A stretch of 63,936 nucleotides of DNA, counting the filler, from Octopus bimaculoides (lineage: Eukaryota), in the NCBI RefSeq assembly GCF_001194135.2. It is 8 parts of 7 records of this genome, joined end to end, with 100 filler letters (N's around TTAATTAATTAA, not from the genome) between each part and the next. Parts side by side here need not be neighbours in the genome. Positions count along the whole stretch, not along the records: positions 34,324 to 47,822 come from NC_068990.1; 7 more parts are not named here. One strand, written 5' to 3'. The position numbers and the translations under genes were made by a program. The notes under the pieces are model-generated. The model did not search any database, was not told the DNA's origin, and was given only the letters and a program-made list of their open reading frames with translations. Below, piece after piece: positions 34,224 to 47,822 of this stretch; within the stretch, counting starts at the first letter, position 1, and each line of letters begins with the position of its first letter.

Positions 34224-34325
34224 NNNNNNNNNNNNNNNNNNNNNNNNNNNNNNNNNNNNNNNNNNNNTTAATTAATTAANNNNNNNNNNNNNNNNNNNNN
34301 NNNNNNNNNNNNNNNNNNNNNNNTG

Positions 34326-34358
<33 letters not shown>

Positions 34359-34375
34359 GTATGTATATATGTATG

Positions 34376-34447
<72 letters not shown>

Positions 34448-35030
34448 CATACATGGCCTCACATGGATTTGATGTACTGTACATGAGGTCAAAGACCTCA
34501 TACAGGGTATGTTAAATAGAAACATACATACATACATACCTGCATACACAGGCGTACATGCTCACACACACACACACTGTGCAATTCATACCGGAGTAAA
34601 AAATAGAAGAAAACATCTTTTTACCATGTAGAAATTCACTGATATGATCGCAATTGTTAATGATATTTATCAACATCATCATTACTGCCATCATATATAT
34701 TTACATGCATTAAAAACACATCTGTGTTGAAGATTAATCTTACTTTGTATTATGGATTTTTCATATTTCCTTATTAGTCCTGTATCAATAAATTTCAACA
34801 ATAGCATATCTAAGTCCATTACCATATGAAGACTAAGAAGGAAATGTGAAAATTCCTTTAAAAAGCAAAGAAAAAAATATTAAACTTCTATGCAGTTGTG
34901 TCTTTGATACAAGGTCAAAAGAAAACCGACCCCTTTACCCACCCCTGTCTCTCACATATAATTCACACATGCACACATATACAAATACTTCAGCATATGC
35001 ACACATGCATATATAATTTAATCTAATTTG

Positions 35031-35094
<64 letters not shown>

Positions 35095-35345
35095 NNNNNN
35101 NNNNNNNNNNNNNNNNNNNNNNNNNNNNNNNNNNNNNNNNNNNNNNNNNNNNNNNNNNNNNNNNNNNNNNNNNNNNNNNNNNNNNNNNNNNNNNNNNNNN
35201 NNNNNNNNNNNNNNNNNNNNNNNNNNNNNNNNNNNNNNNNNNNNNNNNNNNNNNNNNNNNNNNNNNNNNNNNNNNNNNNNNNNNNNNNNNNNNNNNNNNN
35301 NNNNNNNNNNNNNNNNNNNNNNNNNNNNNNNNNNNNNNNNNNNNN

Positions 35346-35410
<65 letters not shown>

Positions 35411-36144
35411 GTATATATATATGTATGTATGTATGTATGTATACACACAGAGAAAGATAGAGACAGACAGTGATATTGTTTGAAGTGGTGTACAGATTTT
35501 ATATATTAAGAGAAAGGAGATAGACAGAATTTTGGATAATTATTCATTTAGTCTTCATCAGTCTTTGAGAGATTCATTATGAATGATTTACTCACAGGTA
35601 ATTCGCACCTTTTATATAAATATGTGAGTTTTTTGAAGAAATTTGGAGATGAATTAGGAAGAGAATGTTCTCTGTTATCTTGAATCTAGATATGTGTGTT
35701 GATTTTGGAGGATTGGTTAGAGGGAAAAAAGAAAGAAAAAAGGACAAGCAGAATGGAAGAAAGATAAATAAGGAAAGAAAAAAGAACGATAAAAGAATGA
35801 AAGAAAGAAAGGGGTCTTTTCTGAGATGGTTGAAATTGCATTGTATTTTTGGTCAGTTGTCATGCTACAAAGCTGTACAAAAGTTTATTTTTTCTGAAAC
35901 GGTTGAAACTAAGGATAGTTCAAGAAGTCAGTTTTCTTTTATTAATTATTGCAGTTTTTGTCAGGTGTCATGTTATCTCACTGTAGAAAATAGAACCTAT
36001 CAAATAGTTTTGGAAGGGATATAAATGTGTGTGTGTATTAAAGTGTATATGTGTGTTGGCTGCTTAACCCTTTCATTACCATATTTATTCTGAGACGCTC
36101 TGTGTTTCTTTCAATTAATTTTAAATATAACAAGGAATTTAGTG

Positions 36145-36300
36145 TAATTGGGGTGGTTGGTGTTAGGTAGGGCATCCAGCTGTAGAAACTCTGCCAGATC
36201 AGATTGGAGCCTGGTGCAGCCTTTCGGTTCATAGTCCTCAGTCAAATCGTCCAACCCACGTTAGCATGGAAAGCGGACATTAAACGATGATGATGATGAA
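36145..36300 (+). mobile_element. SINE family E, 3' part, with (GAT)n tail
   Basis: GGGCATCCAGCTGTAGAAACTCTGCCAGATCAGATTGGAGCCTGG...GCATGGAAAGCGGACATTAAACGATGATGATG; nearly identical to 62930-63057. Confidence 0.9.
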
Positions 36301-36844
36301 GAGGAGGATTAAGCTAGTGTCAGGAACATAAATTGTGAGTAAACTCTGAAGACAAGACATTTTCCAGTTATTTTAGTAACAGTGATGAGTACATTATTAA
36401 TACTATCCAGTAGCAATCTGATTTGGTTCATATGGGATGCTTATTTTTTAAATAAGAATTTCTAATGTGTTCATAAATATATATATATTTTTTCTGTTCT
36501 TCATGTAATTTAGAAAAAAATCTTTTTGGTATGTAGTTTCATTGCCTTTCACTACTTTGGGTCATTCCTTAGGCATTTGTAGGAGAGAAAAATCTTAAAT
36601 CTACTGTTTCCACATACTTCCAGATGCTTACTTAGTGGAACCATTTGATCACTTTGCATATCACATTCATCAAATGTATTTTCCTATAATAACCACTGTA
36701 AGTGGGCTAATACCATCTATTTCTCTGCATCCAATCTATATCTAACAAGATTTCCTCATGCTTCATCTTCCAAATATCCACCCATCACATCAGTCTTTTA
36801 ACTATGGTACTAGTTAACTATGGCACTATTCAGCTGTTAGTAAA

Positions 36845-37128
36845 AGCTTGTGTTTCAGTGGTGAGAGCATCAGGCTTACAATCATGAGGTTGTCAGTTGA
36901 ATTTGTGAACCAGGTTGTTTGTTGTGTTCTTGAGCAAGACACTTTGTTTCATGTTTCTACAGTATCACCTTTTGTCTTTCTCTTGGACAACATCAGTAGC
37001 ATGGAGAGGTGAAACTGTTAGGCATGTGCAACTGCTGGTCTTTCACAAACAACCTTGCGTGGACTTGTGCCTCAGAGGGGAACTTTCTGGGTGAAGATCC
37101 ATGGTCACTCATGATCAAAGGGGGTCTT
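36845..37128 (+). mobile_element. SINE family F, CpG-decayed
   Basis: Reverse-complement homologue of 10408-10712, ending AAAGGGGGTCTTT. Confidence 0.75.
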
Positions 37129-45251: not shown

Positions 45252-45282
<31 letters not shown>

Positions 45283-45651
45283 TTGTGTATGTGTATGCAT
45301 ATGTACATATATAGAGTTTATTTATTTATTTTTTTTTATTTGTGTCTGTGGTTATGTGTGAGTAAATTTTATAATCTTAGAAGAAATTTTGAATTTCTTT
45401 TTTGATTTGCTTTTTTATTTTTATTTTTAATTTATTAATATGATGTAGCACAGACAGGATATAAATTCCTTATAAGTTCACTTCTTGAGTCAGTTTCGAA
45501 TTTTACTTAGTTCCTTGTTGTTTATTTTTTAAATTTTTCTTTGCTTATATAATACAATAAATTATACATATATGAATCTTGTGTTTTATACATCCATCCA
45601 TCCATCCAACCATCCATCCATCCACCCATCCATCCATACACACACACACAT

Positions 45652-45682
<31 letters not shown>

Positions 45683-46124
45683 GATATATATATATATGTA
45701 TGTGTGTATGTGTGTATGTATGTATATATATATATATATATAAATGTATGTATGTATATATATATGTATGTATGTATTTATGTATTTACGTATGTATGTA
45801 TGGATGGATGGATGGATGTATGGATGGATGTATATAAAGCCTAAAGTCAGGAGATGTGACAGGTGAAGACAAAATTTTATTATTCCATATGGCTTCCATA
45901 TGTTTACTGCTGTTTTGTATCTTTCTTCATGTAGTCATATTAATTTCAGCATGCAAAATTATACATACATTTTTGTATCAATATATACGTGCAACATTAT
46001 CTAATACAGTTGTAATTTCACAAATTTATGCTAACAAAGAATGGTAACTCATCAGATTACCAGAACATTATGATTACATCTGTGATTCGGATTTCCTAGG
46101 TTTTTTTAATGCATGGACATCTTG

Positions 46125-46560
46125 CAAGCTCACAGGGCTTGGTTCCACATAAAAAAAGCACCTGTGGTGGTGGTGTCACATAAAAAATACCCATGCCGGT
46201 TTCACATAAAAAGTTACCTGTACTGATGTCACATATACAGCATCCGTGCTAGTGCCATGTATTAGCAATGATGCTAGTGTCACACAAAAAAGCACCCAGT
46301 ACACTCTGTTTAAGTGGAGGGCATTAGGAAAGGCATCCAGCAGTAGAAACTATACTACAACAGACAGTTGGAGCCTGGGGCAGATTGCTGGCTGGCCAGC
46401 TCCTATTAAACTGTCCAACTCATGCCAGCAGGGAAAACGGACGTTAAATGACGATAATGGTAATAATGCTGATGATGCTGATAATAATGATGATAACAAT
46501 AATGACGATGATGATGAAAATGATGATGATGATGATGATGGGGTGGGTAGTGATGACAAT
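46125..46560 (+). mobile_element. SINE family E with internal ~26-30-bp tandem repeats and a long (GAT)n tail
   Basis: Repeated GTCACATAAAAA.CACC units, then GGCATTAGGAAAGGCATCCAGC...GGACGTTAAATGACGAT and (GAT/AAT)n. Confidence 0.8.
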
Positions 46561-46749
46561 GGTATGTATTATATTACACTACAATGTAACTGAGTACTGT
46601 GTTGACTGTTAGCTAACTCCAAACAGGAAGTTTACTGTGACAGTCACATGATTTTCTGAATCCTTATTTATACTACACTTTTACACACACATGCACACAC
46701 ACACAGACACACAGACACAAACAGACACACACACACACATTCTTTTCCT

Positions 46750-46955
46750 CTTTGAATTGTTTCAGTCATTTGACTGTGGCCATGCTAGAGCACCACCTTG
46801 ACGGGTTTTAGTTGAACAAATCAACCCCAGGACCTATTTTTCTTTTAAGCTTAGTACTTATTCCATCAGTTACTTTTGCTGAACCACTAAGTTACATGGA
46901 CGTAAACACAACAATACTGGTTGTCAAGTGATGTTGGGAGGACAAGCAAAAACAT
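46750..46955 (-). mobile_element. SINE family A 3' half, heavily CpG-decayed
   Basis: GACTGTGGCCATGCTAGAGCACCACC...GCTGAACCACTAAG...AAGTGATG versus GCGG/ACCGCC/GAACCGC/AAGCGATG in 3997-4200. Confidence 0.88.
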
Positions 46956-47158
46956 AAAGGCAAAAACACACAGATATATATAGGCATAGGCATGGTTGTG
47001 TGGTAAGAAGCTTATGCTGACACTTATGCCGGATTAAATGATACTGCCTAGGTGTGAAAATCATAGCGATATCTGTGGAGCAGCTGATGATAAAGGTATG
47101 TTGAATTGTCTAAATGGCTGTTTTTAAATGTGCAGATTAGTTTTATAAGACATCTATT

Positions 47159-47219
<61 letters not shown>

Positions 47220-47544
47220 AAAAGCAGCTGTCTGGCTTCTGTACCAGTGACATGTGAATAGCACCATGTGAGTGTGGTTGTTACAATCGTTAATAATTGT
47301 TTATTATTAACAGCATATCAATCATCATACTTTACAGCTGTTTCAGTTAATACTCAGTGAATCAATTGAAAATTAAATTCATATGACCTGGGTATAATAT
47401 CTTAAGACGGAAAAAATATATACTTCGCAGTTTAATGTGCATGTTTATGGATACATTATAGCAGACTGAATGATGTAGTTTATGATTTGTATTTTTATAT
47501 GTTCAGGCGAGGGAATTGAATATTTATTGGAGATAAGTTAGAGT

Positions 47545-47822
47545 AGTACATACGTACATAAATATATACTTAAATACATACATACATACATAAATACATA
47601 CAAACATTACGTATATACGTACAGCTACCTACGCACATAAGTACATACGTACATACGTACATAAGTACATACATACCTTACGTACGTACATACGTACATA
47701 CGTACAAACGTACATACATACATAGATATTATACGTACATACATACATATATACATACGTACATACATACGTACATTAGGTACGTACGCACGTACATACG
47801 TACATACATACTTACCTAGATT
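47545..47822. repeat. (TACA/TACG)n degenerate tetranucleotide repeat
   Basis: Direct reading. Confidence 0.9.

What the first reader, a model, noticed from the sequence alone, without database searches (positions are those of the whole stretch)
34324..47822. Sharply bounded CpG-decay domain: fossil record of germline methylation, possibly a hidden gene body
Seen: every SINE copy I compared in this block has CpG converted to TG or CA (B copies at 37633, 41583, 42590; A copies at 39907, 46750; F copy at 36845). Same-family copies outside retain CpG (3519, 3997, 10214, 28646, 48720, 62483). Unique DNA in the block also looks CpG-poor. The family E copy at 36145 keeps several CpGs and may be younger. 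The block edges coincide with two artificial spacers, and the last block (62834-63936) shows a milder version. Established: many invertebrates, including molluscs, have mosaic, gene-body-centred methylation, and 5mC deaminates to T. Inference: either a long methylated intron or gene body, or a contig from another chromatin domain joined here.
Basis: partly seen in the sequence, partly recalled or inferred. Interest (0 to 1): 0.7.

Follow-up and report, generated by a model that had tools for sequence, protein, structure and literature searches.

The report
CpG-depleted stretch of octopus DNA
This 13.5-kb piece of octopus-type DNA has lost about three quarters of its CpG sites to TpG/CpA, the ordinary footprint of long-term germline DNA methylation in a mosaically methylated invertebrate genome; its "sharp edges" are only the ends of the piece.

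Summary
The core observation holds. Non-tandem DNA of the piece has CpG o/e 0.28 (73 seen, 261 expected), and each of the five sequence blocks alone gives 0.25-0.31. TpG and CpA are in excess and GpC is about 1.0.

Three Octopus rhodopsin loci fetched here carry the same repeat families. Their CpG o/e is 0.82-0.87, with no overlap between 1-kb bins (p = 2e-6).

- Repeat copies in the piece differ from their family consensus at non-CpG sites by 11.2%, against 11.1% for reference copies.
- They keep 13 of 69 consensus CpGs (19%), against 71 of 97 (73%); p = 3e-12.
- So the copies are not simply older. The loss is CpG-specific, about 5-fold faster, and equal on both strands.

Unique DNA is as depleted as the repeats, so the effect covers the whole piece and is not aimed at transposons.

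"Sharply bounded" is an artefact. The edges are the ends of a piece joined to unrelated pieces, and there is no internal boundary.

A gene-body (intron) location fits published O. bimaculoides methylomes but could not be tested. No exon, Pfam domain or strand asymmetry was found.

This is a known phenomenon, so interest is low.

The parts
34324..47822 (.). Whole piece: uniformly CpG-depleted, AT-rich (GC 31.6%) Octopus-type genomic DNA. It holds 12,081 read bases in 5 blocks; 22% is tandem repeat.
   Evidence: non-tandem CpG o/e 0.28; blocks 0.25-0.31; 1-kb bins 0.17-0.48.
35095..35345 (.). Assembly gap (251 N) inside a (TA)n microsatellite.
   Evidence: (TA)n on both flanks.
36140..36300 (+). 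Repeat family E, copy 1. It keeps 5 CpGs.
   Evidence: aligns to E2 and to the E copy in Logan contig L001. CpG o/e 0.56.
36845..37330 (+). It looks SINE-like by eye, with CpG o/e 0.26 and TpG 1.47 / CpA 1.66.
   Evidence: There is no second copy in the piece or in the reference loci. No tRNA was called.
37325..37418 (.). Short, strongly diverged fragment of repeat family A.
   Evidence: matches L003 19346-19419; 24.7% non-CpG divergence.
37414..37900 (.). MITE-like element with 24-nt terminal inverted repeats. SINE B1 is nested inside it.
   Evidence: arms 37414-37437 and 37877-37900, 88% complementary.
37633..37855 (+). SINE family B, copy 1. It keeps 4 of 16 consensus CpGs (7 TG, 5 CA). Non-CpG divergence is 10.5%.
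38703..39220 (.). Assembly gap (518 N) inside a (TA)n microsatellite.
39364..39815 (.). (GAT)n-type trinucleotide array with GAC variants. It is a local CpG o/e peak that says nothing about methylation, because every T>C in the array creates a CpG.
   Evidence: The 156-aa D-rich ORF here is a repeat artefact.
39905..40032 (.). Repeat family A, one end of the element. It keeps 1 of 4 consensus CpGs. Non-CpG divergence is 7.5%.
40027..40345 (+). Interspersed repeat M (end of an element with a transposase-like coding remnant). It keeps 2 of 10 consensus CpGs (2 TG, 6 CA). Non-CpG divergence is 5.1%.
   Evidence: It is 84.6-86.3% identical to copies at the three Octopus rhodopsin loci. Pfam gave no hit.
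40487..40496 (.). 10-N gap flanked by the same 20-nt string on both sides. This is an unmerged overlap, not missing sequence.
41583..41803 (+). SINE family B, copy 2. It keeps 3 of 16 consensus CpGs. Non-CpG divergence is 11.6%.
42578..42775 (-). SINE family B, copy 3. It keeps 2 of 14 consensus CpGs. Non-CpG divergence is 18.9%.
44613..45251 (.). Assembly gap (639 N) inside a (TA)n microsatellite.
46290..46462 (+). Repeat family E, copy 2. It keeps 3 of 8 inferred CpGs. A 127-aa open frame (46210-46590) runs through it but has no real homologue.
46740..46992 (.). Repeat family A, other end of the element. It keeps 1 of 8 consensus CpGs. Non-CpG divergence is 10.8%.
47547..47815 (.). (TACG/TACA)n microsatellite at the end of the piece. 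It holds 22 of the piece's 111 CpGs.
   Evidence: TACG 16, TACA 30, TATG 0.

Best explanation
The piece is a short, gap-ridden scaffold fragment of an Octopus-type genome. It consists of microsatellites, old SINE and DNA-transposon copies, and AT-rich unique DNA.

The fragment lies in a part of the genome that has been cytosine-methylated in the germline for a long time. Methylated CpGs deaminate to TpG, or to CpA when read on the other strand. Here this happened about 5 times faster than CpG loss in unmethylated parts of the same kind of genome. As a result both the inserted repeats and the surrounding unique DNA have lost roughly three quarters of their CpGs.

In octopus such methylation is concentrated on the bodies of about 14,000-21,000 genes. 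The most likely setting is therefore a long intron, or another part of a constitutively transcribed, methylated gene.

The 'sharp boundaries' are the ends of the piece, created when unrelated pieces were joined.

Shown: CpG-specific, strand-symmetric decay across the whole piece at unchanged non-CpG divergence. Inferred: methylation as the cause, and a gene-body location.
For: 1. CpG depletion. Non-tandem CpG o/e is 0.28 with GpC 1.01, TpG 1.25 and CpA 1.46. All five blocks give 0.25-0.31.

2. Taxon. The B, A and M repeats of the piece match copies at the rhodopsin loci of O. vulgaris, O. bimaculoides and O. sinensis. The O. bimaculoides locus has the same style of N gaps next to (TA)n tracts.

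3. Reference level. Those loci have non-tandem CpG o/e 0.82-0.87. Their 1-kb bins are 0.53-1.36 against 0.17-0.48 in the piece (Mann-Whitney p = 2.3e-6).

4. Age-matched repeat test:
- CpGs retained: 13/69 in the piece against 71/97 in the reference copies (Fisher p = 3.3e-12).
- Non-CpG divergence: 146/1301 = 11.2% against 196/1773 = 11.1% (p = 0.91).
- -ln(fraction retained): 1.67 against 0.31.
- The B-family result holds with a consensus built from reference copies only.
- In consensus-free pairs, 'CG in the reference, TG/CA in the piece' occurs 41 times against 3 for the reverse.

5. Unique DNA (0.26) is as depleted as repeats (0.30). The effect is regional, not aimed at transposons.

6. 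Literature (PMC9476566):
- O. bimaculoides has 3.6-7.5% fully methylated CpGs and about 7% intermediate ones.
- These are strongly enriched in exons and introns.
- 5,482 + 8,972 genes are methylated along the body, and 6,545 in the 3' part.
- The pattern is the same across tissues.

7. In a squid assembly fetched in passing, a CpG-poor locus (0.04-0.28, with a 2-kb island of 1.0-1.2) coexists with a CpG-normal rhodopsin locus (0.78). Mosaic depletion is therefore ordinary in coleoids.
Against: - No bisulfite or expression data could be consulted, so methylation is inferred from its mutational footprint only.
- The reference is a single genomic neighbourhood (rhodopsin) in three related species. 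It provides only 8 independent repeat copies, and the consensus sequences rest on 3-8 copies.
- The species of the piece is not determined.
- Nothing in the piece points positively to a gene. There is no exon-like ORF or Pfam hit and no TG/CA strand asymmetry. The A/T and G/C skews (-0.056, +0.039) fall within the spread of reference windows.
- The same paper reports somewhat higher methylation on satellites and on intergenic repeats than on repeat-free intergenic DNA. A non-genic methylated region is therefore possible.
Confidence: 0.8

Rival explanations
1. The region is methylated but not genic. It would be an intergenic, repeat- and microsatellite-rich domain, or an unannotated non-coding transcription unit, that attracts germline methylation independently of a protein-coding gene body.
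For: - 22% of the piece is tandem repeat.
- PMC9476566 reports relatively higher methylation on satellites, and on intergenic repeats compared with repeat-free intergenic DNA.
- No exon or domain was found, and no strand asymmetry.
Against: - The same paper finds methylated CpGs strongly enriched in introns and exons, and transposon methylation low overall.
- Unique DNA in the piece is as depleted as the repeats. That fits a transcription-unit-wide mark better than repeat targeting.
- Octopus introns are long, so 12 kb without an exon is unremarkable (established knowledge, not tested here).
Confidence: 0.2
2. There is no methylation footprint. The repeat copies here are simply older, or the region decays faster in general, so CpGs were lost along with everything else.
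For: - The copies are old (7.5-25% non-CpG divergence).
- Non-CpG C>T/G>A changes are slightly more frequent in piece copies than in reference copies (50/512 = 9.8% against 50/691 = 7.2%, summed).
Against: - Overall non-CpG divergence is the same (11.2% against 11.1%, p = 0.91), yet CpG retention is 19% against 73%.
- Reference copies of equal or greater age (12-16%) still keep 56-75% of their CpGs.
- The pairwise asymmetry is 41 to 3.
- GpC is not depleted (1.01).
Confidence: 0.03
3. The difference is between genomes, not within one. The piece would come from another octopod with globally lower CpG content, or from a regional mutation regime (for example a lack of GC-biased gene conversion), and not from local methylation.
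For: - The species of the piece is not established.
- A 1.36-kb Logan contig from another octopod-like sample (L001) also has CpG o/e 0.31.
Against: - GC content of non-tandem DNA is similar (33% against 37%), and the loss is specific to CpG, not to G/C in general.
- From the 80.66 million CpGs counted on both strands, with an assembly of about 2.0-2.4 Gb at about 36% GC (sizes from memory), the O. bimaculoides average CpG o/e is about 0.5-0.65. That lies between 0.28 and 0.85, as expected for a mixture of two kinds of region within one genome.
I could not check this.
Confidence: 0.06
4. It is a true chromatin domain whose borders lie exactly at 34324 and 47822.
Against: - Beyond both coordinates the window holds only N and an artificial stop-codon linker (and the scan program's note).
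- The piece starts and ends in microsatellites, as short-read scaffolds do.
- CpG o/e is flat up to both ends.
Confidence: 0.01

Closest known systems
Mosaic, gene-body-centred CpG methylation of invertebrates and its CpG o/e footprint. It has been described for O. bimaculoides (Macchi et al. 2022, PMC9476566), and from my own knowledge for Ciona and oysters.
   Same: - CpG-specific depletion with TpG/CpA gain in one class of regions, next to CpG-normal regions in the same kind of genome.
- The depletion covers whole regions, including embedded repeats.
- The organism has the DNMT1/UHRF1 machinery (paper).
   Different: - Nothing differs in kind.
- Methylation and gene membership are not measured here, only the mutational footprint.
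- The paper stresses low methylation of transposons on average. Here transposon copies lying inside a depleted region carry the full footprint, which fits methylation by location and not by element type.
CpG decay of Alu and other SINE copies in globally methylated vertebrate genomes.
   Same: - Dated SINE copies lose CpGs several times faster than they change at other sites.
- The products are TG and CA in equal numbers.
   Different: In vertebrates this happens nearly everywhere. Here it depends on location: same-family copies at the rhodopsin loci show essentially no CpG excess loss (-ln retained 0.31 at 11% divergence).
CpG islands and sharp methylation boundaries.
   Same: A truly sharp switch from CpG-poor to CpG-rich was seen in passing in squid locus L002 (o/e 0.18 to 1.0-1.2 and back to 0.18 within 3 kb).
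   Different: The piece itself contains no such switch. Its apparent borders are joins between unrelated pieces.

Membership tests
Historically germline-methylated (CpG-decayed) region of a mosaically methylated invertebrate genome | CpG o/e clearly below that of the unmethylated fraction of the same kind of genome, with GpC not depleted | tested here: met
   Non-tandem CpG o/e is 0.28 against 0.82-0.87. The 1-kb bins do not overlap (p = 2.3e-6). GpC is 1.01.
Historically germline-methylated (CpG-decayed) region of a mosaically methylated invertebrate genome | Reciprocal excess of the deamination products TpG and CpA, equal on both strands | tested here: met
   TpG is 1.25 and CpA 1.46, against 1.12-1.13 and 1.10-1.15 at the reference loci. 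Counts are 720 TG against 694 CA (p = 0.51) in unique DNA, and 25 against 25 in repeats on the + strand.
Historically germline-methylated (CpG-decayed) region of a mosaically methylated invertebrate genome | CpG sites of dated repeat copies decay much faster than non-CpG sites, relative to same-family copies elsewhere | tested here: met
   13/69 CpGs are retained against 71/97, at 11.2% against 11.1% non-CpG divergence. The B-family result holds with a reference-only consensus. The pair asymmetry is 41:3.
Historically germline-methylated (CpG-decayed) region of a mosaically methylated invertebrate genome | The source organism has mosaic CpG methylation | tested here: met
   The repeat families are shared with three Octopus genomes. 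The O. bimaculoides methylome is mosaic and gene-body-centred (PMC9476566). The exact species of the piece is not determined.
Historically germline-methylated (CpG-decayed) region of a mosaically methylated invertebrate genome | Remaining CpGs are actually methylated in germ cells (bisulfite or EM-seq) | not testable with these tools
Methylated gene body (intron of a constitutively transcribed gene) | The piece lies between the annotated start and end of a transcription unit | not testable with these tools
   No search against eukaryotic genome DNA was available. Eleven window ORFs are not on record as proteins.
Methylated gene body (intron of a constitutively transcribed gene) | Exons or coding homology inside the piece | tested here: not met
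   100 stop-to-stop frames of at least 40 aa were listed. The 10 longest non-repetitive frames have no Pfam hit. The E2 frame has only a repeat-derived relative among 1.84 billion representatives. Absence of exons in 12 kb does not exclude an intron.
Methylated gene body (intron of a constitutively transcribed gene) | Transcription-associated strand asymmetry of composition or of CpG decay | tested here: inconclusive
   AT skew is -0.056 and GC skew +0.039, but reference 6-kb windows range from -0.055 to +0.112 (AT) and from -0.099 to +0.165 (GC). TG:CA is symmetric.
   ARAGORN found no tRNA. Rfam gave no tRNA-type match at E of 1 or less. The copies are decayed, so this does not exclude a tRNA origin. 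Dispersed multi-copy status is shown for B and A.
Tc1/mariner-type DNA transposon (repeat M) | DDE transposase domain, terminal inverted repeats, TA target duplication | tested here: not met
   Only an end fragment of about 320 nt is present. Pfam gave no hit for the window fragment or for the longer squid copy. The resemblance to transposase C-termini is from memory only.

The most novel reading that the evidence does not exclude
The piece is not part of a protein-coding gene body. It would belong to a non-genic region that octopus germ cells methylate constitutively, for example a microsatellite- and repeat-rich heterochromatic block or a long unannotated non-coding transcription unit. That would be a second class of methylation target beside gene bodies in cephalopods.
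Probability: 0.18. Interest if true: 0.35.

Novelty: already known. Interest (0 to 1): 0.15.

Why it matters
It matters little beyond annotation.

The result shows that CpG decay measured on dated repeat copies can flag historically methylated regions of a cephalopod genome from sequence alone. It also shows that transposon copies in octopus carry a methylation footprint according to where they sit, not what they are.

That is a useful nuance to the published statement that octopus transposons are largely unmethylated. It matches what is known from other invertebrates.

For the scan, the lesson is methodological. Apparent domain borders that coincide with joins between pieces are artefacts.

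Tried and rejected
1. Exact-pattern scans for the SINE-B core in metagenome and viral contigs gave 0 hits.

2. Looking up window ORFs as recorded proteins gave nothing (1 ORF, 10). The locus could not be re-found in another assembly.

3. 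A word-indexed homologue search with the E2 open frame found no candidate. An exhaustive HMMER search found only one repeat-derived 66-aa ORF on a 1.36-kb Logan contig. This was not enough to build an E-family reference.

They were replaced by the longest non-repetitive frames, which gave no hit.

5. Rfam gave only sub-threshold microRNA-model hits on microsatellites. I rejected these as low-complexity artefacts.

6. The repeat finder on the whole piece was swamped by microsatellites, and its 575-nt 'inverted repeat' is N matched to N. I replaced it with a dust-masked self-BLAST.

7. Base-composition skew was considered as a pointer to the direction of transcription. I rejected it because reference windows vary as much.

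8. An A-family consensus built from reference copies only (3 copies) is dominated by one copy and inflates divergence. The all-copy consensus and the consensus-free pair test were used instead.

9. The CpG o/e peaks at 39221-39970 and 47252-47822 were considered as possible unmethylated islands. I rejected this because they are (GAT)n and (TACG/TACA)n arrays, in which single transitions create CpGs.

10. Classifying repeat M as Tc1/mariner was not supported by Pfam.

11. One script call did nothing.

Full report
**What the piece is**

The usable sequence runs from 34324 to 47822. It holds 12,081 read bases in five blocks separated by four N runs, with a GC content of 31.6%.

I tested the gaps first.
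- Three gaps (35095-35345, 38703-39220, 44613-45251) sit inside (TA)n microsatellites that are present on both flanks.
- The 10-N gap (40487-40496) has the same 20-nt string TTTTTTTGTTATTGTTTTTT on both sides. It is an unmerged contig overlap, not missing sequence.
- The only reading frames that cross gaps are microsatellite pseudo-ORFs such as YIYIYI.
- All counts below were made within blocks, never across a gap.

About 22% of the read bases are tandem repeats.

The remainder consists of interspersed repeats and AT-rich unique DNA. The repeats found are:
- three copies of a SINE (family B: 37633, 41583 and 42578 reverse);
- three fragments of family A (37325, 39905, 46740);
- two copies of family E (36140, 46290);
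- a MITE-like element with 24-nt inverted ends that carries B1 inside it;
- the end of an element I call M (40027-40345).

No tRNA gene was found. No Rfam family reached threshold; all matches were microRNA models hitting microsatellites. The longest non-repetitive frames have no Pfam domain.

Yes for the depletion.
- The symmetrised dinucleotide ratios for the whole piece are CpG 0.37, TpG/CpA 1.39 and GpC 0.97.
- After masking tandem repeats, 73 CpGs are seen where 260.6 are expected (o/e 0.28). TpG is 1.25, CpA 1.46 and GpC 1.01.
- Interspersed repeats (0.30) and the remaining unique DNA (0.26) are equally depleted.
- Each block alone gives 0.25-0.31. Nine 1-kb bins of non-tandem DNA range from 0.17 to 0.48.
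- The result therefore does not depend on how the blocks were scaffolded.

The only windows with o/e above 1 are a (GAT)n array (39364-39815) and a (TACG/TACA)n array (47547-47815). In such arrays every T>C or A>G change makes a CpG, so the ratio says nothing about methylation.

**Where it comes from, and a reference to compare with**

No eukaryotic DNA database was available, so I obtained reference DNA indirectly. An octopus rhodopsin sequence was used only as a probe. It returned the rhodopsins of O. vulgaris, O. bimaculoides and O. sinensis. Their loci were fetched with 10-kb flanks as L003, L004 and L005.

BLAST of the piece against these loci finds the B SINE (up to 84% identity over 206 nt), family A and element M (84.6-86.3% over about 315 nt). 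The piece is therefore Octopus-type DNA.

The O. bimaculoides locus also shows N gaps of 10 to 1,296 bases next to (TA)n tracts, as the piece does. That fits this assembly but does not prove it.

These loci have non-tandem CpG o/e of 0.82-0.87, with 1-kb bins of 0.53-1.36. There is no overlap with the piece (Mann-Whitney p = 2.3e-6).

For families B, A and M I aligned the piece's copies with independent copies from the reference loci. I built CpG-aware consensus sequences and scored each copy.

| | Copies in the piece | Reference copies |
|---|---|---|
| Consensus CpGs retained | 13 of 69 (19%) | 71 of 97 (73%) |
| Non-CpG divergence | 146/1301 = 11.2% | 196/1773 = 11.1% |
| -ln(fraction of CpGs retained) | 1.67 | 0.31 |

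- The difference in CpG retention is highly significant (Fisher p = 3.3e-12). The divergences do not differ (p = 0.91).
- Almost all lost CpGs in the piece are now TG, CA or TA.
- A value of 0.31 is about what ordinary substitution alone would do to a dinucleotide at 11% divergence. The reference copies show essentially no CpG excess loss, and the piece shows about five times more.
- For family B the result is unchanged when the consensus is built from reference copies only.
- A consensus-free count gives 41 sites with CG in the reference copy and TG/CA in the piece's copy, against 3 the other way round (one pairing per copy).
- On the + strand the products are 25 TG and 25 CA in repeats, and 720 TG against 694 CA in unique DNA. 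The decay is strand-symmetric.

The 'simply older' explanation is therefore rejected.

**What could not be confirmed**

- The F copy has o/e 0.26 but no second copy to define its ancestral CpGs.
- The E copy at 36140 does keep five CpGs. On a three-copy consensus its non-CpG divergence (15.9%) equals that of the other E copy (15.0%), so 'younger' is not supported.

**The boundaries**

Both edges of the 'domain' are the ends of the piece. Beyond them the window holds only N and an artificial linker. The ratio is flat up to both ends. Nothing can be said about the real extent or sharpness of the region, so 'sharply bounded' is an artefact of concatenation.

**Mechanism**

The pattern has four features:
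- it is CpG-specific;
- it is strand-symmetric;
- it covers the whole piece, not only the repeats;
- it is several-fold faster than in same-family copies elsewhere.

This is the classical footprint of 5-methylcytosine deamination in the germline. That step is an inference; methylation itself was not measured.

The inference fits the published O. bimaculoides methylome (PMC9476566):
- 3.6-7.5% of CpGs are fully methylated and about 7% are intermediate.
- They are strongly enriched in exons and introns.
- 5,482 + 8,972 genes are methylated along the body, 6,545 in their 3' part and 17,586 not at all.
- The pattern is the same in brain and hatchling.

The paper counts 80.66 million CpGs on both strands. 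With an assembly of roughly 2.0-2.4 Gb at about 36% GC (sizes from memory), the genome mean o/e is about 0.5-0.65. That is what a mixture of regions at about 0.85 and about 0.28 would give if the depleted class made up roughly a third to a half of the genome. This is my inference, not a measurement. On that reckoning the piece is an ordinary member of a large class.

**Gene body or not**

A long intron of a methylated gene is the most likely setting, on the published enrichment. Nothing in the piece tests it.
- There are no exon-like frames or domains.
- Eleven ORFs are not recorded as proteins.
- A/T and G/C skews are no larger than in reference windows.

A non-genic methylated, repeat-rich region remains possible. 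I give it about 0.2.

**Comparison with what is known**

This is the known mosaic, transcription-unit-centred methylation of invertebrates, read from its mutational footprint.

The one nuance concerns octopus transposons, which are reported as largely unmethylated on average. Copies that lie inside a depleted region nevertheless carry the full footprint. Methylation here follows location, not element type, as in other invertebrates (from my own knowledge).

**Seen in passing**

A squid assembly was fetched while searching for relatives of element M.
- One locus there has o/e of 0.04-0.28 interrupted by a 2-kb island of 1.0-1.2.
- The squid rhodopsin locus in the same assembly is at 0.78.
- Truly sharp CpG transitions therefore exist in coleoid genomes, but not in this piece.

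**Verdict**

The phenomenon is already known, so interest is low.

Noticed in passing
window 37414-37900: A MITE-like element with 24-nt terminal inverted repeats (37414-37437 and 37877-37900, 88% complementary) has SINE B1 (37633-37855) inserted inside it. This is a nested-insertion record. One arm reads GTCGTGG and the other GTTGTGG, which is another CpG/TpG difference.
   Followed up: partly
window 40467-40516: The 10-N gap is flanked by the identical 20-nt string TTTTTTTGTTATTGTTTTTT on both sides. The two contig ends overlap and were not merged, so this stretch is probably duplicated in the assembly.
   Followed up: yes
window 47547-47815 and 39364-39815: Two tandem arrays hold 36 of the piece's 111 CpGs. 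The tetranucleotide array has TACG 16, TACA 30 and TATG 0, so the variant units are CA-type only, never TG-type. I could not tell whether this reflects array dynamics (A>G creating CpG) or one-sided decay.
   Followed up: partly
window 40027-40345; L002 10028-10321: Repeat M is 77-78% identical at the nucleotide level to a copy in a contig of ENA assembly ERZ21867824. That assembly also carries a rhodopsin 94% identical to the Loligo forbesi type, so it comes from a decapodiform squid. This similarity is high for neutral DNA across the octopus-squid split. It suggests an old constrained sequence, a very slowly decaying element, or horizontal transfer.
   Followed up: partly
L002 1-12842 and L006 1-20939 (ENA ERZ21867824): In the squid assembly one locus has CpG o/e of 0.04-0.28 with a 2-kb CpG-rich island (5001-7000, o/e 1.0-1.2) holding short repeat-like ORFs. 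The rhodopsin locus in the same assembly is at 0.78. This is a real example of sharp CpG transitions in a coleoid.
   Followed up: partly
ENA ERZ21867824 (contigs ctg121870l of 330 kb and ctg122970l of 450 kb): An assembly held in the collection as a metagenome contains long contigs of squid host DNA. Prokaryote-style gene calls on them give short spurious ORFs that enter the protein database (for example P0003, 72 aa).
   Followed up: no
L001 (Logan SRR11869391, 1361 bases): This contig carries family A and E repeats like those of the piece. It is itself CpG-poor (o/e 0.31), and its copies are more diverged (about 27% at non-CpG sites for family A). It probably comes from another octopod. The sample identity is unknown.
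   Followed up: no
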